Assembly (NCBI GenBank): GCA_001179505.1
Contig: CDMY01000718.1
Coordinates: 1-64,000, forward strand
Direction of reading: 5' to 3'
DNA length: 64,000 nt
From: Vitrella brassicaformis CCMP3155
Taxonomy: Eukaryota > Protista > Chromerida
The notes under the pieces: model-generated
The model's input: the letters and a program-made list of their open reading frames with translations, nothing else
What the model was told of the DNA's origin: nothing
Database searches by the model: none
Translations under genes and position numbers: made by a program
Part shown: one piece after another, positions 2,931 to 56,452 of the stretch
Layout: the number at the start of each line of letters is the position of its first letter
How positions within the stretch are numbered: the first letter of the stretch is position 1

Positions 2931-4719
2931 CTAGCCCTTTTTCTGCCACTGCTGCTGCTTCCCCCTCTGGCCCTTCTGACCTTTCTCACGACCCCCGCGG
3001 CCTCGGCTGCATGAAGGCAACACACACGCGTCATAAACACACACACACACACACACACACAAGCCATGGAGGTAATAAGTATTGCATCGTCTGCTGACCT
3101 TGGTGGCCGGCCGGAAGCGCCTTCGTCACCCGCCTGGGCCTGAACGAAGCCACACACATCGACAGACGCACACTAATGGGTATATGTGTGCACGGATTGC
3201 GTGGCGTCTCGCTTACGGTGTCGACAGGCGGCTGTGCAGCCGCTTTGGGGGGGGCTTCAGGAGCTGCCTTCTCCCTGGGCGCACTGACCTGCATCCACTC
3301 CTTCTTGGGCGCCGTGGGCGGCATGAATACCTTGGCCGGCGCCCGCTTTGCCGGTTCGGCCTTGGCAGGAGGGCCCTCACCCCCAGCACCACCAACACCG
3401 CCCCCGCTCCCGCCGCTGTCCCTCGCCCTGTCCTTGTCTTTGCCCTTCTCCTTTGGTGCGCCGTCTGCCTCGCCAACGGCATGATGTGGCTTGACGCCCA
3501 GTGTCCGAGACAGCAGGGTGGCCGCAGCTTTGCCTTCAGTCACGCTGACTTTGGCGTGAGGGGGGTGCCGAGCGGCGGGGGCTGGGGCGGGTGCAGCCTT
3601 GGTGCCGTTGCGGGCGTCCGCCTTGCCCTTTTTGGGTTTGGGTGCGGGGGGCGGGGGCGGACGGGCCACAGACAGCCCGTGGATGTTGGCAAACTCCTTG
3701 GCCTTCTGCTCTTTCAGCTGCATGAAACCAGCCGAGAGAAAAAGAAAAGCAGGGTTGCGTGTGGGAATCCGTGTGTCCATCGGTGACCCATCTGTGCGTG
3801 GGTGCGCACCTTTCTGTATTTGCTGTCGCGTCTGGCGAGTATCTCGAGGACGAGTGGCGTGAGCTGCTCATCTTTCGCGGCCTCCTTCTGACGCTCCAAC
3901 TCAGCTGCAGCAGCGAAGGCACACATGGCACGAATGTGGTCAGCATTTCCTCCCTGTTCTCCCTCTCCTTCGTACCTTGCAGCTCAGCGGCACTGACGGG
4001 CTTTTGCGCTTCCTTGGGCGATGCGAGCGACTCTAGGAAAGCCTGATAGCTGGGGTCTGAACAGACAATGGAGAGGGTGCAGGTGATGATCTGATCTGAT
4101 CAACCTATGTATGGGTGTGGTCCGCGTTCAGATGATCTACGCACCTGATTCGATGGTGTCTTCCCGCTGGTCCGTGGTGGCCCGCTTCTTGGGCGCTTTC
4201 TGGTAGGGCGCGTTGGAGACCACCGCACGGAAAGACTCACCTACACAACACTCGCACGCCAGGCGTGTGTGATGCCTCCTCCTCTTCTCGTCTCACACAC
4301 ACGGAGACACACCTCGGTCATCTACGAAGGAGTGACCCTGAAATGACCACCACACACAGAGATCAGATCGCATCAGATCAGGCCGGCCATCCGTTGCGCC
4401 GCTCACATGGTAGTTCTTGGCGAAGTCCTCGGCGTCTGAAGGCTCACGGAACTGAAGGTAGCAGCGGCCATTGGAGCTCGCCTGCCGATGGCCGTCGCCC
4501 GCGCCTCGCCGCTTGCCGGGGACGAAGTGCAGCCACTCGTACTTGCCATCGTAGGACGCGATAGTCTCCACAAACTGCGACTCATCCAAAGTGGGAGGCA
4601 GCAGACGAACCACAACTGAGAAGACGGACAAAGCAAGAATAAGCTGGAAACGGGTATCCGCGTGTGCCTGTGTCGGTCTTACGCTTCAGATTAGCGCGGC
4701 TGGGCCTCTTTTCTGCCAT
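2931..4719 (-). CDS. UPF3: Nonsense-mediated decay factor UPF3 (Smg4/UPF3 domain), multi-exon
   Basis: Spliced MAEKRPSRANLK|LVVRLLPPTLDESQF...WLHFVPG...RCYLQF...FAKNYH, then FQGHSFVDDRG, AVVSNAPYQKAP, DTIES and YQAFLESL match the UPF3 RRM-like domain. A K/E/P-rich tail ends SRGRGGREKGQKGQRGKQQQWQKKG*. Confidence 0.85.
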
Positions 4720-4901: not shown

Positions 4902-5527
4902 GAGGAGGTAACACAGCAACACGCACGCGGCCGCCCTGCGACGCTCTGCAACGCCATCACCATTGTGCTTGGATCTTGCCTGCCTGCAGATAGTCAGGTC
5001 CATGCTCATGCCGTACAAACCCAAGCAAATCGTTTTCGACAGAGATAGCGACCGTAGGCAACACACACAAAGACGGCTGGACCGCTGCTGTTTCATGTCT
5101 GCCTCCGTGCCAGGTGCGGTGCTGGAGGTGGATCAACTCTCTCACCAGACGCTCATCGAGGTGAGAGAAAGACACGCCAAACCACACACATCTCACTGCA
5201 TATCTGTGTGTCTGATCTCCCTCCCTTCAGTTGGGTCTGCAGAACTACACCATCCGTTCGCTCGAGGCAGCGGACGTCAAGGGCCTGTTTGGCCTGCAGG
5301 AGGACGAGACCGTCAAGAAGGAGGAGCCCGAGCCCGTCAAGGAGGCCCCACTGGCGGCATCGGCGCTGCGGCAGCGTGCCACGGAGGCCACGTCCAAGGA
5401 CACCAGCGCGCGCGTGAAGCTGCCCGAGACGGACGCCTTCAAGATGCTCCTCGACGAGCGGTTCGTGTGCCCGCTCATCGCCGCCAGCCTCCTGTGTCTG
5501 CTGGTGCTGGGGTTGTTCTTCGAGTGA
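4800..5527 (+). CDS. Hypothetical tail-anchored membrane protein (about 4 exons)
   Basis: MSGKKLYVEVAGISEDS x2 EE|IVRSMLMPYKPKQIVFDRDSDR|...AVLEVDQLSHQTLIE|LGLQNYTIRS... ends in a hydrophobic helix FVCPLIAASLLCLLVLGLFFE*. Donors are canonical gtaaca/gtaggc/gtgaga. Confidence 0.6.
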
Positions 5528-51410: not shown

Positions 51411-52356
51411 ATGGTGAGCAGGGGCAGGCAGAGCAGTGCACCCGTCGGCCTCACGCCATGTGTGTGCGTGTGTCTTCCAGGCTGTCTGTCGAGTGCACAT
51501 CAAGACACCACCGTACGTAGCGTTGGCCCCGACAATTGTTGGCTGAATGAATGGATGGATGTTGGCTGGACGGGCGGGGCGGCTGATGCGGCTCGTCCCA
51601 CGTACGCCAAGGCACAGTACAGCAACACTCGCGTCGTGGGCTGACTGACACGTATATGGATGGCGTCAATGTGTGTTCATGTGGGCTGTGTGGGGAGTGG
51701 CCGCCATGGTGCACAAAGCACAACACATTGATGAATGGATTAATGGCGCTAAGGCTGGGGGAGGGAGATCAGGTGTGGGTGTTGGGGAGAGACGGACTTT
51801 TAACGGCCATCTCAGTGGGTACCAGCTCAGAGACGCAATGCTGGCCGGTGATATATCTAAATCATTACTTGCCTGCAATCGTTGCCTTCATTTTATGTTT
51901 TCAGCAGCATCGTTTAAACAATCCATTTAGACATGTACCATGCAGCACCCTGTGTCTGCCTTGGCCAAATGCACCGACTTAACCGAAGTGTCTCACCAAA
52001 GTCCACGAGGATGCCGGCACACTCCCAATCGCATTACCTCCTGCCCTGCCCATCAGAACCAACCCGCCCTCGCATATCCAGTGCTGTGTCTGCAAGTCTG
52101 ACTTCCTCGACGACTTGCAGAGAGGTGTCAGCTCAACTCCCTCACACACGACACACACGGACTTAACCAAAGTGTCTTCATAGAAAGTGACGAGTAGAAG
52201 CCTCGCTGCTCTGCCCATGAGAGCCCGGGCGCCCCTCGTATACCTACGGAGCTATCGCTGATCCCACACTACACCAGCCAGCCAGCCAGGCCCGTCTCAT
52301 GTATTGCCCTGCATGTGACCCCGCCCGCCCCTCCGCCCATGACTGTCTGTGTCTGT

Positions 52357-55109
52357 CTATCCGATGTTCGCCACATTGTTGGTATGGCCAGCTTCATCTT
52401 GGTCTGTTGGCTGCCTGCTGGAGCACACCCACCTGCCGTCGACCATGAACTTGTACATGTACCTGCCGGGCGGCAGCGACAAGGGCAGCACGAAGCAGTT
52501 GTGCTCCCCCGCAGACCAGTACATCGGATATCCGCCATGCCAGCCGTCGAATGAGCCCTTAAGCTCCACCTTGGAGGGACGAGTGTGCGCCGTCGGCACG
52601 TACTTGAAGATGTGATCGATCCTGACACCACCACCATAGGCACACAGCCACGATCTGGCCGCTGCTCTTAGTGCGGTGTGTGCGTCTGTCTCTGTGGGTG
52701 GTTACTTGCTGTCGCCACTCTTCTCTGCTGCAGAGAGGAGCGGTGTGGTCTCCTCATCCGCCGCCACCGCTTTGGCCGTGTCGATGTCCATATCGTCGTC
52801 CCCCTCCATGCTGGACTTGGTGTCGCTCGTGTCCTCCATCGGAGCACAGGCATCCTGCCAACCATGGCACAGGACAGCGAAACAGATCCATACCGTCGGC
52901 GCTCACGCGTACATATCCACAGCCAACCCACCTCTCTCGGGTTTTTGTCTTCTTTTTGGTCGCCACTCGCCGCCTCGTTCGTCACCGTTTGAGGCGCCGC
53001 AGACACTTCCTGCAGACACACACACAAGTGCAGCAACGTATCTGCTGTCTTGCAGCTCCACTTGACGGCTTGGCTCACCTTGGCGTGTTGGCGGGCTTCC
53101 CGGGTCAAATCGGCCAGTGCGGGCAGATGCCAGTGCTGTTGGAGGGATGGTGGAGGGGATGGTGTGCGAGGCTGTGACACACACACACACACACACACAC
53201 ACATCCAGTGTGATCGATTCGGACAGGCGTGCGGGGCAGCTTACCAGTGGTGGTGGGGGTGGTCGGCTTCGCTCCATGAGAGCCGCCATGACGGCATCGA
53301 ACGCCGACATGCGAGTCCACCCCCCGATCGCCCCACGTGTGCGCCCATCACACATCAGCTGCACCAGATGGCCCACCGTGGAGCACCCAGCATCCTTCAG
53401 GCTGTGCATGAAGTCCTTGGCGCCTATGAGACTCTGCTCGCCCCGCGTGTAGTAGTGCAGCCGTCGACCCGCCCGACTGGCAGCGCACCACTGGATGAGA
53501 AACTTCCACTGGGGATCGCCACCAAACACACCGCAGCCCCAGTTGCCTGAACGGCCATACACACACACGCACACACACACGAATGGACGCAGACGAATCA
53601 TGAACAGCCATCATTCCTGTGTGTGTGCGTGGTATCCACTCACCCGTCGCGAAGGGCATACCATCGACGACCGTCAGGCCATTGCTGTGGAACGCCGTGT
53701 GTGCCTTGTTGAGATCACGCACCACAGACGTCTCGTCGTACTGGTGGTTCTTCCTGTGCTTGCCAAAGTTGACGGCATCGAAGGCCACGATGTACTTGCC
53801 CAGGACGGAATGGCCGTTGGTATGTCTCATGGGGGCGGTGTCGTGGGCATGGCCAGCGAAGCTGAGGGTGTCGCGGCCGTAGCCGGTCGTCGTGCTGAAC
53901 GTCCTGGAGCCGACGATCATGAAGGCCTCAGTCGATCCCATGGGTCTGGGAAAGAGGTGCTGGGCGACGAGGCACTCCGGCTCGATGGAAAACAAGATCT
54001 CCTCCTGCACCGCACCTGAAATACTCACACAGACGCAGCAAGCTTGGCAGAGACAGGTCCACATGGATCAGTGCGTGTCTGTGCCTGTCTGTGTCTGTTT
54101 ACCGTTTCCCAGCGTCCCGCCACCGATGTGGGCATTGGCGAAGTCGCCCCTGATGCCCTTCGAGTCGAAGATGGACGCATCCTTCCCAATCATCAAGTGC
54201 ACGTCCATCAGGGGGATTGTCGACCTCGCCCACTCGTCAAGTCCCGCCCCGGGGCCGTCCAGGGCTCGGAAGATGACCACACGCTCTGTCTCGGTGGTCT
54301 TGCCCTGCTTGATCGCCCGCGCCATGGTGTCCAGGTAGTGGATGAAGCACTGCAGCTTGGCCTTGGCAGAGGGTGTCTTGTTGTCGAACAGGCGGTCGAA
54401 GTTGAGGCTGCCCGGGTGGCCGTGCTTGTGCAGACAGAGGAAGTCCGCACCGATGAGGACGAAGCACTGGCGGGCAGTCATGTGTGCCTCCGTGCCGCTG
54501 TAAGAGTGGCTGGACGGGGGCAGCAGGGGGAAGCTGAGGTCGCTCTTGGAGAGGACGTCACACAGGACGGGCAGCGTCTCGTTGATGAAGGTAGAGGTCA
54601 TCACCTTCTCCACGCCATGCAAGCTGCCCCCCCGCCCGCCCATGGCCGACTGCAGCGAGCTCAGCAGACGAGTGACATCCCTGGGCTCCTTTGCGCGTCC
54701 ATAATCCGTCGCATAGTTGGCGAGGATGGCCTTGACGTTGGCAGGTAAGCCGTGATGGGCAGGCGACTGGCGAGACGATGACGAAGACGACCAAAACGAT
54801 GAATGCACCTACACAGCGCAGCCGAGCACAGCAGCTCCAGCCGGACACACCAATTTCACCCAGGCAGCAGTGCCCTCGTGTTCTTGCTTACTCACCGGCT
54901 GTGTGGCTGACGTGTGTCCACCGGGGCCGTACCAGCAGTCACGCGAGAAGTGGTTGGAGTTCTTGTCCTTACACCACTTGCAGAAGTGCGTTGTGTGCTG
55001 CTCCGTGCAGCCAGGGACGCGGCAAGTCATACCAAGCCAATGCTGCACACACACACACGATGGGACAAGTCCAATCGCTGGATGCTGGTAGGGTGGTTGC
55101 TCTCACCAT
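52357..55109 (-). CDS. PARG: Poly(ADP-ribose) glycohydrolase with N-terminal zinc finger and C-terminal CBM48 (AMPK-beta-type glycogen-binding) domain
   Basis: PARG motifs are DFANAHIGGGTLG|GAVQEEILF (GGG-x-QEE), TGYG, IVAFDA, RDLNKAHTAF, ATG|NWGCGVFGGDPQWKFLIQWCAAS. The N-terminus is M|HWLGMTCRVPGCTEQHTTHFCKWCKDKNSNHFSRDC. The last exon (SK|IDHIFKY...VELKGSFDGW...LSLPPGRYMYKFMVDGRW...GHTNNV) is CBM48. The three linker exons join in phase. Confidence 0.85.
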
Positions 55110-55798
55110 GGCTGTGTCCTTTGCAGGGCAGATCAGGAAGTATGGCCCTCTGTGCCTCTTCTCGCTCTCTTCGCTTGGCGGACCAAAGAATGAAGCGCGG
55201 GAGATGGCGAGCGGACCAAGACGGCTCAGCAGCTGAGGAAATGCAGCAGGACAGGCAACAGGCATACCTGCTAATGTATTCCTGTAGGTCGAGACCCATC
55301 TGTGAAACCAGGTGATCCATAATTCCTGTGGCATCCTGTCGGCTTGTCCTGTCCTCGAGAGCGTCGCTGTTTTTTGTTCCCTGCTGGCCTTTGCGTCGTC
55401 TTGGAGACAATCGAGCGATACTCGCGGCGCATTGCTGACCGACCTCTGAAGAGCCGAACACAGCCGAGATCTTTGAGGATCCAAAGGTCTGCAAACAAGG
55501 CGCAGCACAACAGCAACACAGCGTTTTGACATCGTTCTCTTCCTTCATGCTGTGTCAAAAAAGGGCTGCTCCAGATCTGCGAGCTTCAAGTTGCAGATCT
55601 TATCCGACGCCAGTGCAGGGAGGGGTAGACAGGCCGTGTGCATGCTTTGCATGTACATGCTGCTAGTTTAGTGCGTGAGACAACAGGATCCCTCCGGGGT
55701 TACAGACACGAGTCTCGTTAAACACACTAACCAACCAACCGACGCCCAAGAAAACGCCATTCCTCGGCTCGTAAGGCATTCACGGGAAGCAGCGAGTC

Positions 55799-56452
55799 AT
55801 GTTGCAGGTACGCACGGTATATGGGCCCATAACGGACTGCTCGCCAGGATGCATCCTGGACGATTCTCTCTTTTATTGTGCGTGTGACACTGTGCTCAGA
55901 CGAGGGGCTGTCGCGTGCCCGGCTGCAAGACGAAGCACAGGCGGCACTACTGCCGTCTGTGCGGCGACGAGGACAGCGACCACTGGGCCAGCGAGTGCAC
56001 ACACCCCGGGAGCTTTACCCTCTACCACCAGACAGACCTACCGTCTGGTCAGGCCATCGCGTCGGGCCGCAACATGAAGCGGGGAACAGGAGGCATCGTT
56101 GGGGGCGGCATCTACTTGTAAGCAGACGACCGGCCAGGCTGTCTCCGTCTCATCTCCGCCACCGTGTGTGTGTCTCGTCAGTGCGGCGTCTGAGCAGATC
56201 ACCATGGGCAAGGCGCACCATCGAGGCTGCATGATCGAGGCGCGAGTGTACCTGGGCAACATCCTTCAGGTTTCCGCCCTCTGGCCCGGGCAGTACACCT
56301 TTGACAGCCTCACAGGGTCCGGCTACGACTCAGTGCACGTGATAGGCATGCCCACGGGCGATGAGTACATCGTGTATAGTCAGGAGCAGGTCAGGCTGAG
56401 GAAAATTCGTGACATGGCGACAGGCAGAGAGATACCGATCAACCACAAATGA
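55799..56452 (+). CDS. Minimal H-Y-E ADP-ribosyltransferase (PARP/Gig2-like) with N-terminal zinc finger, about 165 aa
   Basis: MLQ|TRGCRVPGCKTKHRRHYCRLCGDEDSDHWASEC, then TLYHQT (H), GIVGGGIY|FA (Y), IEARVYLG, GYDSV and GDEYIVY (catalytic E). Two GT-AG introns. Confidence 0.8.

What the first reader, a model, noticed from the sequence alone, without database searches (positions are those of the whole stretch)
52357..54810. PARG fused to a glycogen/starch-binding CBM48 module
Seen in the sequence: after the PARG domain, three short exons join in phase (final junction AGC AA|G ATC) to an exon encoding VELKGSFDGW...LPPGRYMYKFMVDGRW...NNV. Established: this is the AMPK-beta/CBM48 signature, which binds alpha-glucans, and chromerids/apicomplexans store amylopectin. 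Inference: a PARG anchored on storage-polysaccharide granules would link ADP-ribose signalling to carbohydrate storage. I do not know this architecture from characterised PARGs.
Basis: partly seen in the sequence, partly recalled or inferred. Interest (0 to 1): 0.75.

Follow-up and report, generated by a model that had tools for sequence, protein, structure and literature searches.

The report
Starch-binding module fused to PARG enzyme
In the alga Vitrella brassicaformis, an enzyme that removes poly(ADP-ribose) marks from proteins carries a starch/glycogen-binding module on a flexible tail. The fusion is expressed, exists in six gene copies, and was found in no other organism searched, so it may link ADP-ribose signalling to starch stores.

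Summary
On the minus strand, eight coding exons (55030 to 52357) join in phase. They encode a small 8-ligand zinc finger, a complete canonical PARG catalytic domain, a ~100-residue disordered linker and a C-terminal AMPK-beta-type CBM48 (Pfam AMPK1_CBM, E 1.2e-19).

Spliced contigs in one public run (X1) skip six of the seven introns at the predicted GT..AG borders and bridge the seventh (E/F) in one contig. That includes the last junction, AGC AA|G ATC. The public Vitrella brassicaformis CCMP3155 protein P0005 (699 aa) matches the exon model in every exon translation.

The genome holds seven closely related ZnF-PARG paralogs. Six have a CBM exon behind a phase-2 intron at the same position, and one carries two CBMs. 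The glucan-contact residues (two Trp, Lys, Asn) are kept in all copies, and the PARG catalytic motifs are intact. The CBM model superposes on the AMPK-beta and SEX4 CBMs (TM 0.80-0.85).

Among the 150 best PARG relatives out of 1.84 billion representative proteins, only Vitrella proteins carry the CBM. The closest Chromera PARG found does not. No paper in the searched library mentions the architecture.

Starch anchoring is inferred, not shown. The scan had already noted a paralog of this fusion at about 95.5 kb on the same contig. Verdict: a real, expressed, lineage-specific new variant of PARG.

The parts
54896..55042 (-). Exon B. The CDS starts at ATG 55030. It encodes a 45-aa N-terminal segment with an 8-ligand Cys/His zinc-finger motif (C3, C8, H12, H15, C17, C20, H27, C32).
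   Evidence: Equals P0005 residues 1-45. The X1 joint 54805->54893 removes intron 54809-54895. No Pfam or PDB match. AF2 pLDDT is 73-81 for residues 10-30.
54103..54808 (-). Exon C. PARG helical domain and the start of the macro fold, ending inside the GGG..G part of the catalytic signature.
   Evidence: PARG_cat_N 1.7e-10. Equals P0005 residues 46-280. The X1 joint removes intron 54016-54102.
53644..54015 (-). Exon D. Core of the PARG macro fold, starting with VQEE (catalytic Glu-Glu, P0005 E285/E286).
   Evidence: PARG_cat_C 1.6e-25. Aligned to solved PARGs (8adj, 6.7e-44) with the signature conserved.
53245..53546 (-). Exon E. End of the PARG macro fold (GNWGCGVFGGD diphosphate loop) plus C-terminal helices, ending in a Pro-rich stretch.
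   Evidence: PARG_cat_C 1.7e-14. X1 record 4 joins it to exon F.
53079..53171 (-). Exon F, linker (31 aa, Pro-rich).
   Evidence: X1 record 4, 395 nt, no mismatches. P0005 residues 506-536. AF2 pLDDT about 30.
52932..53009 (-). Exon G, linker (26 aa).
   Evidence: X1 joints 53008->53078 and 52853->52931. P0005 residues 537-562.
52706..52854 (-). Exon H, acidic linker. It ends AGC AA in phase 2.
   Evidence: X1 records 2 and 4. P0005 residues 563-611.
52622..52705 (-). Last intron (84 nt, GT..AG, phase 2). If it is retained, the frame stops at once (AAG TAA), giving a PARG without the CBM.
   Evidence: Sequence. The same position and phase are seen before all seven CBM exons of the family.
52357..52621 (-). 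Exon I. Complete AMPK-beta-type CBM48 (87 aa) followed by the TAG stop. The 3' UTR continues to at least 52000.
   Evidence: AMPK1_CBM 1.2e-19. AMPK beta-2 CBM in PDB 1.5e-10. AF2 pLDDT 91.4 and Foldseek TM 0.80-0.85 to the AMPK beta and SEX4 CBMs. X1 record 1 covers 52000-52621, and record 2 carries the spliced junction.

Best explanation
This is one expressed gene of Vitrella brassicaformis. It encodes a modular protein: an N-terminal 8-ligand zinc finger, a catalytically intact canonical PARG (which cuts the ribose-ribose bonds of poly(ADP-ribose)), a ~100-residue disordered Pro-rich and acidic linker, and a C-terminal AMPK-beta-type CBM48.

Shown here: the exon structure, the splicing, the domain identities, the intact catalytic and sugar-contact residues, the beads-on-a-string model, and a family of six such fusions.

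Inferred: the protein has no signal peptide, so it is cytosolic, which is where Vitrella keeps its starch. The CBM48 tethers the enzyme to the alpha-glucan surface of starch granules. From there the long linker lets the PARG domain remove poly(ADP-ribose) from granule-associated proteins. Alternatively, or in addition, starch acts as a reservoir that holds the eraser and releases it when starch is degraded, much as glycogen is thought to hold AMPK.
For: Gene model: GT..AG borders and phases; every exon translation is found exactly, in order, in public protein P0005.

RNA: the spliced contigs of run X1 skip or bridge every intron. Record 2 (no mismatch) carries the H|I junction, and record 4 runs E-F-G-H.

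No independent CBM gene is likely. In the CBM frame there is no ATG between the TAA in the intron and Met33 of the exon, which lies after the key Trp27.

Domains: Pfam. The PARG signature GGG..QEE, the TGY motif and GNWGCGVFGGD are conserved against solved PARGs and in a 60-sequence alignment.

CBM: the equivalents of AMPK beta W100, K126, W133 and N150/N151 are kept here and in the Vitrella copies (W, K, W and the second Asn are invariant in all nine; the first Asn is kept in eight). The fold matches cyclodextrin-bound AMPK CBMs and the SEX4 CBM.

Linker: AF2 pLDDT is about 30 over residues 516-613, against more than 90 for PARG.

Family: six of the seven close ZnF-PARG paralogs have a CBM exon behind an intron of the same position and phase. 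A transcript of the 95.5-kb paralog shows its own junction. A JGI transcript contig shows the spliced D-E-linker-CBM of the 180-kb paralog.

Biology: Vitrella makes cytosolic starch.
Against: There is no binding, localisation or activity data.

Two AMPK contact positions differ (L146 to Ala, T148 to His).

AMPK-type CBMs also make protein contacts in AMPK, and in giant viruses they are fused to an RNA-binding TROVE protein, so a carbohydrate role is not guaranteed.

The zinc finger is shared with a neighbouring ART-like gene, so the primary address of the protein could lie elsewhere.

The RNA evidence consists of short assembled contigs, not single long molecules, and run X1 is labelled RNA only as a guess (its spliced contigs are the argument). 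The share of transcripts that retain the last intron, which would give a CBM-less isoform, is unknown.
Confidence: 0.55

Rival explanations
1. The fusion is real, but the CBM48 does not anchor the enzyme to starch. Instead it acts as a protein-protein or regulatory module. It might dock onto a partner or onto the PARG domain itself, or bind another glycan or even the ribose polymer. The true address of the protein would then be set by the zinc finger.
For: In AMPK the CBM also packs against the kinase domain (the full-length AMPK structures among the hits). AMPK1_CBM also occurs fused to TROVE in Nucleocytoviricota. The same zinc finger heads the divergent ART-like neighbour. L146 and T148 are not conserved.
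Against: The Trp/Lys/Trp/Asn sugar platform is kept across CBM exons whose identity to the window's copy drops to 42%. That pattern fits selection for glycan binding. AF2 places the CBM on a ~100-residue disordered tether rather than docked. Nearly all other AMPK1_CBM partners are alpha-glucan enzymes.
Confidence: 0.22
2. By analogy with SEX4 and LSF (a phosphatase plus CBM48 acting on the glucan itself), the CBM brings the macrodomain hydrolase to a substrate on or in the polysaccharide. That substrate would be an ADP-ribose-type or nucleotide-sugar-type adduct on starch or on the priming proteins, rather than classical protein poly(ADP-ribose).
For: SEX4 and LSF1 CBMs are among the closest solved relatives of this CBM. 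The family is expanded to six copies in a starch-storing alga.
Against: No such glucan modification is known. The catalytic site is that of a canonical PARG with no visible re-tooling.
Confidence: 0.07
3. The fusion is a gene-model artefact. The CBM48 exon belongs to a separate gene, or is only rarely spliced on, and the normal product ends at the TAA of the retained last intron.
For: Retaining the 84-nt intron gives an immediate stop. The evidence for this gene's own H|I junction is one contig with only 10-11 nt on the CBM side. The public models of two paralogs (P0002, P0004) lack the CBM.
Against: Those 10 letters match exon I exactly, and the contig carries this gene's own variants. The paralog's junction contig has 30 nt on the CBM side. 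The transcript contig L025 runs spliced from PARG exon D into the CBM and 3' UTR of the 180-kb paralog. P0002 and P0004 are truncated inside PARG_cat_C, so they are incomplete models. No usable start codon precedes the CBM. The intron position is conserved in seven CBM exons.
Confidence: 0.04

Closest known systems
Canonical eukaryotic PARG (e.g. PDB 8adj, 4a0d, 3uek, 4epp)
   Same: PARG_cat_N plus PARG_cat_C. The GGG-X-QEE catalytic signature, TGY and the GNWGCGxFGGD loop are all present. E values of 6.7e-44 to 1e-28 against solved PARGs.
   Different: It carries an N-terminal 8-ligand zinc finger and a C-terminal CBM48 on a disordered tether. None of the 150 best-scoring PARG representatives from outside Vitrella has the CBM.
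AMPK beta subunit carbohydrate-binding module (PDB 1z0m, 2f15, 4yee)
   Same: Same Pfam family (PF16561). Fold TM 0.80-0.84 at about 32% identity. The W100, K126, W133 and N150 equivalents are kept.
   Different: It is not an AMPK beta. The protein ends right after the CBM, with no AMPKBI/ASC domain. L146 is Ala and T148 is His.
SEX4 / LSF1 glucan phosphatases (PDB 3nme, 4pyh, 8j5d)
   Same: The same design principle: a hydrolase that removes a modification, tied to a CBM48 that directs it to starch. CBM fold TM 0.83-0.85.
   Different: The catalytic domain is a PARG macrodomain, not a dual-specificity phosphatase. The two domains are separated by a long disordered linker, whereas in SEX4 they form one integrated unit (that comparison is from general knowledge, not tested here).
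Vitrella paralogs P0001 (808 aa), P0003 (648 aa), P0165 (831 aa, CEL95779.1)
   Same: Same ZnF-PARG-linker-CBM48 architecture, the same last-intron position, and 66-85% identity in the PARG exons.
   Different: CBM identity to the window's copy ranges from 42% to 84%. The 95.5-kb copy has two CBMs, and the number of zinc fingers varies from copy to copy.

Membership tests
Canonical PARG (Pfam PARG_cat_N + PARG_cat_C) | Both Pfam domains score above the curated cut-offs | tested here: met
   PARG_cat_N 41.7 bits (cut-off 25.6). PARG_cat_C 90.4 and 54.4 bits on exons D and E (cut-off 26.3). P0005's precomputed domains are PF20811 and PF05028.
Canonical PARG (Pfam PARG_cat_N + PARG_cat_C) | Catalytic signature GGG-X6-8-QEE with the Glu-Glu pair | tested here: met
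   P0005 G274-G276 and Q284-E285-E286 lie in columns that are at least 90% conserved across 60 PARGs. They align to the same motif in solved PARGs. The motif spans the C/D splice junction.
Canonical PARG (Pfam PARG_cat_N + PARG_cat_C) | Diphosphate-binding loop GxWGCGxFGGD and the TGY tyrosine | tested here: met
   W407 and G410 are invariant. G405, G408, C409, F412, G414 and G325/Y326 are at least 90% conserved. Alignment.
Canonical PARG (Pfam PARG_cat_N + PARG_cat_C) | Hydrolysis of poly(ADP-ribose) | not testable with these tools
   Needs an enzyme assay.
CBM48, AMPK-beta type (Pfam AMPK1_CBM) | Pfam PF16561 above the cut-off | tested here: met
   70.8 bits against 26.8, E 1.2e-19.
CBM48, AMPK-beta type (Pfam AMPK1_CBM) | Beta-sandwich fold that superposes on solved CBM48 modules | tested here: met
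   AF2 pLDDT 91.4 with eight strands. Foldseek TM 0.80-0.85 and rmsd 1.4-2.5 A to the AMPK beta-1/beta-2 CBMs and SEX4.
CBM48, AMPK-beta type (Pfam AMPK1_CBM) | Sugar-contact residues (AMPK beta-1 W100, K126, W133, L146, T148, N150; numbering from general knowledge) | tested here: inconclusive
   W, K, W and N are conserved here (P0005 W639, K669, W676, N693/N694). W, K, W and N694 are invariant in all nine Vitrella CBMs. The L146 position is Ala and the T148 position is His.
CBM48, AMPK-beta type (Pfam AMPK1_CBM) | Binding to alpha-1,4/1,6-glucan | not testable with these tools
   Needs a pull-down or ITC with starch, amylopectin or cyclodextrin.
AMPK/SNF1 beta subunit | C-terminal AMPKBI/ASC domain that binds the alpha and gamma subunits | tested here: not met
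   The protein ends at the CBM. There is no PF04739 hit on any exon or in P0005's precomputed domains.
SEX4/LSF glucan phosphatase | Dual-specificity phosphatase domain next to the CBM48 | tested here: not met
   No DSPc hit. The resemblance is in design only.

The most novel reading that the evidence does not exclude
ADP-ribosylation is an unrecognised regulatory layer of storage-starch metabolism in chromerids. A family of starch-anchored erasers (ZnF-PARG-CBM48), paired with ART-like writers that carry the same zinc finger, would control granule-bound enzymes, or couple the cell's starch level to ADP-ribose signalling. In the extreme form, they would act on an ADP-ribose-type mark on the polysaccharide or its primers.
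Probability: 0.2. Interest if true: 0.8.

Novelty: new variant of a known kind. Interest (0 to 1): 0.55.

Why it matters
As far as I know, the accessory regions of characterised PARGs concern nuclear, mitochondrial or chromatin targeting. A PARG tied to a starch/glycogen-binding module, kept in six paralogs with the sugar-contact residues conserved, points to a link between ADP-ribose erasure and carbon storage that has not been described.

The idea is directly testable. Vitrella starch can be purified, so granule proteomics and a simple pull-down would settle it.

It is also a clean natural example of re-addressing an "eraser" enzyme by domain fusion, parallel to SEX4. Its reach is limited: it has been seen only in one little-studied alga, the proteins are already in public databases as automatic models, and the function is inferred.

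Tried and rejected
- My first exon table had two borders off by one and a wrong upstream exon, so the joined frame was full of stops. It was corrected from the ORF frames and confirmed against P0005. In one search a joined translation was computed only to count stops. It was never printed in full, saved or searched.
- Runs X2-X4 turned out to be DNA-like (their contigs include the introns), so they say nothing about splicing.
- The look-up of encoding contigs on P0005 found nothing. The window's own genome is left out of that index.
- The JGI transcript contig L025 looked like a full-length fused cDNA, but it is a chimera of two paralogs (5' from C238, 3' from the 180-kb copy). Only its 3' part is used as evidence.
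- AMPKBI (PF04739) search of the genome: nothing rang anywhere, so it is uninformative.
- PARP family (PF00644) search of the genome: no hit at the neighbouring gene. The neighbour's last exon gives only a very weak PARP hit (E 0.087).
- The zinc finger has no Pfam or PDB relative.
- The immediate stop on retention of the last intron looked like a designed switch. It is simply what a GTRA donor gives in a phase-2 intron, and all seven copies show it for that reason, so I make nothing of it.
- The CBM and PARG-exon trees are compatible with co-duplication but weakly supported. I do not rest on them.
- Word search with the CBM region found only Vitrella PARGs and one unrelated CBM-S6PP protein.
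- Atlas feature search gave no usable hit.
- Literature searches for PARG with CBM48, starch or chromerid terms found nothing relevant.

Full report
WHAT IS THERE

The region lies on the minus strand of a 58.7% G+C eukaryotic contig. The genome has 72.7 Mb in 1064 contigs, and the window is the first 64 kb of contig C718. The organism is Vitrella brassicaformis CCMP3155, whose published assembly also has 1064 contigs (PMC4501334).

Reading the ORF frames and the GT..AG sites gives these exons:
- B 55042-54896 (ATG at 55030)
- C 54808-54103
- D 54015-53644
- E 53546-53245
- F 53171-53079
- G 53009-52932
- H 52854-52706
- I 52621-52357, ending in TAG

Scanned exon by exon, Pfam gives PARG_cat_N on C, PARG_cat_C on D and E, and AMPK1_CBM on I (E 1.2e-19, 70.8 bits). 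The generic CBM_48 model scores only weakly.

IS IT ONE TRANSCRIPT?

Four public runs that hold the stretch were laid on 52000-55500. Three of them (X2-X4) contain the introns and behave as DNA. Run X1 (27 Mb of contigs) holds spliced forms. Its joints remove 54809-54895, 54016-54102, 53010-53078, 52855-52931 and 52622-52705, each with CT..AC ends on the plus strand, which is GT..AG on the gene strand.

- One 395-nt contig without mismatches runs from exon E through F and G into H.
- A 102-nt contig without mismatches covers the end of exon H and then carries ten letters that are exactly the start of exon I.
- A 648-nt contig covers exon I and the 3' UTR and stops at 52621.
- A further contig has 30 nt on the exon I side. 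It differs from the window at five positions in the compared stretch, and those are exactly the differences of the paralog at 95.5 kb on the same contig, including AGC AT|G ATC at its own junction. So it shows the same splice in that paralog.

The word search returned a public protein, P0005 (699 aa, "poly(ADP-ribose) glycohydrolase", precomputed Pfam PF20811 + PF05028 + PF16561). It contains all eight exon translations exactly and in order. The genome paper says these models were built with RNA-seq intron hints.

In the frame of the CBM exon, the intron opens with TAA and holds no ATG. The first Met of the exon lies after the key Trp. An independent CBM gene is therefore unlikely. From then on I used P0005, which a tool had returned.

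A GENE FAMILY, NOT A ONE-OFF

The genome has about twelve PARG-like loci. Seven of the nine best AMPK1_CBM matches in the whole genome lie 0.8-1.7 kb downstream of a PARG on the same strand.

tblastn with the window's exons shows seven close paralogs, with 66-85% identity in the PARG exons and the same C/D/E exon structure. Most have one to three copies of the zinc finger upstream. Five lie on contig C718 at 53, 95, 174, 180 and 241 kb, one lies on C238, and one lies at 229 kb without a CBM.

Six carry a CBM exon, with 42-84% identity to the window's. The 95-kb copy carries two. Every CBM exon is preceded by a phase-2 intron at the same position.

Public models P0001, P0003 and P0165 also have PARG plus AMPK1_CBM. 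P0002 and P0004 lack it only because they are cut off inside PARG_cat_C.

A JGI transcript contig (L025) is a chimera of two paralogs. Its 3' 1.4 kb nevertheless runs spliced from PARG exon D through the linker into the CBM and 3' UTR of the 180-kb copy. An MMETSP transcript ORF (P0009) spans the same part.

Trees of PARG exon C and of the CBMs are compatible with the two parts duplicating together ({53k, 95k-a, 180k} against the rest), but support is weak.

The five more distant Vitrella PARG loci (three have public models: P0010, P0012, P0014) and the closest Chromera velia PARG (P0019, Cvel_27166) have no CBM.

ARE THE PARTS FUNCTIONAL?

Against solved PARGs (best hit 8adj, 6.7e-44), the GGG..G.VQEE signature, the TGY motif and the GNWGCGVFGGD loop are all present. 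In a 60-sequence alignment these are the near-invariant columns.

Against the AMPK beta-2 CBM (1.5e-10), the aligned positions of the two sugar-stacking Trp, the Lys and the Asn pair are conserved. The Leu and Thr positions are Ala and His (residue roles are from general knowledge of the AMPK CBM). Both Trp, the Lys and the second Asn are invariant in all nine Vitrella CBMs, PARG-linked or not.

The CBM exon folds with pLDDT 91.4 into an eight-strand sandwich. It matches cyclodextrin-bound AMPK CBMs and the SEX4 CBM at TM 0.80-0.85.

The full-length model shows a confident PARG (pLDDT above 90 for most of residues 62-510), a disordered linker (516-613, pLDDT about 30) and a separate CBM.

HOW IT MOST LIKELY WORKS

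The protein starts directly with the zinc finger and has no signal peptide, so it should be cytosolic or nuclear (inference). Vitrella accumulates amylose-containing starch in the cytosol next to the pyrenoid (preprint 10.64898/2026.09.25.754361).

The best reading is that the CBM48 tethers the PARG to starch granules. There it either erases poly(ADP-ribose) on granule-associated proteins or is stored and released according to starch level. This is the design of SEX4/LSF, but with a different eraser.

Nothing here shows binding, localisation or substrate. The main rival is that the CBM serves a non-starch role while the zinc finger, shared with the divergent ART-like neighbour, sets the address.

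IS IT KNOWN?

HMMER with P0005 against 1.84 billion representative proteins found 4255 relatives. Among the best 150, a local HMM of the Vitrella CBMs hits only Vitrella proteins. A fusion elsewhere with a PARG of normal similarity would have ranked near the top. One with a much more diverged PARG could have been missed.

The word search with the CBM region found only Vitrella PARGs plus one CBM-S6PP protein. The Atlas lists AMPK1_CBM with starch synthase, neopullulanase, S6PP, DSPc, AMPKBI and, oddly, viral TROVE, but not with PARG. No paper in the searched library combines PARG with CBM48, starch-binding or chromerid terms, and neither the genome paper nor the starch preprint mentions PARG or ADP-ribose.

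The proteins are thus public as automatic models but appear undescribed. The scan's own notes had flagged the 95.5-kb paralog (s1-233319), the writer/eraser pair (s1-205477) and the zinc finger (s1-205706). I checked the first of these myself and the other two only in part.

VERDICT

This is a new variant of a known enzyme kind, apparently lineage-specific, and testable with simple experiments.

Noticed in passing
window 55915-56452 (+): The head-to-head neighbour starts with the same Cys/His zinc-finger motif as the PARG (45% identity over 38 aa). Its last exon gives a very weak PARP-catalytic hit (E 0.087). It may be an ADP-ribosyl writer paired with the eraser. The scan already has this as s1-205477.
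   Followed up: partly
L013 (C718:92500-99500), CBM exons at 4395-4655 and 5219-5473: The 95.5-kb paralog has two CBM48 exons in tandem, each behind its own linker and phase-2 intron. The second groups with the CBM of the 241-kb copy (97/92 support), which suggests exon shuffling or gene conversion between paralogs. Its public model P0004 stops inside the PARG domain and begins with a Tc5 transposase HTH hit, so it is probably a mis-merged model.
   Followed up: partly
L016 (C718:226500-233500): This is the one close ZnF-PARG paralog with no CBM exon within 3.8 kb downstream. Two zinc-finger copies at 4952-5137 (+) probably belong to the next gene.
   Followed up: no
whole genome: There are about twelve PARG-like loci but only a handful of mostly weak PARP-catalytic matches. 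That is an unusual eraser-heavy balance, unless the writers are too diverged for the Pfam model.
   Followed up: no
L025 (JGI 3300017297, 2841 nt): This public assembled transcript is a chimera of two paralogs, joined at the conserved C/D exon border. The 798-aa protein P0164 derived from it is therefore not a real protein.
   Followed up: yes
window 53172-53212, 53552-53587 and other introns: (GT)n / (TG)n microsatellite runs sit just upstream of several acceptor sites of this gene. The read tool skipped them as repeats.
   Followed up: no
Atlas cluster, row 4: AMPK1_CBM is fused to TROVE/Ro60-like proteins in Nucleocytoviricota (77 members). This is another non-carbohydrate enzyme partner of the module.
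   Followed up: no
L023 (C305:192000-196000) and L024 (C297:97500-101500): These are the only two strong AMPK1_CBM loci of the genome that are not behind a PARG. One is presumably the true AMPK/SnRK1 beta subunit. The AMPKBI search was uninformative.
   Followed up: partly
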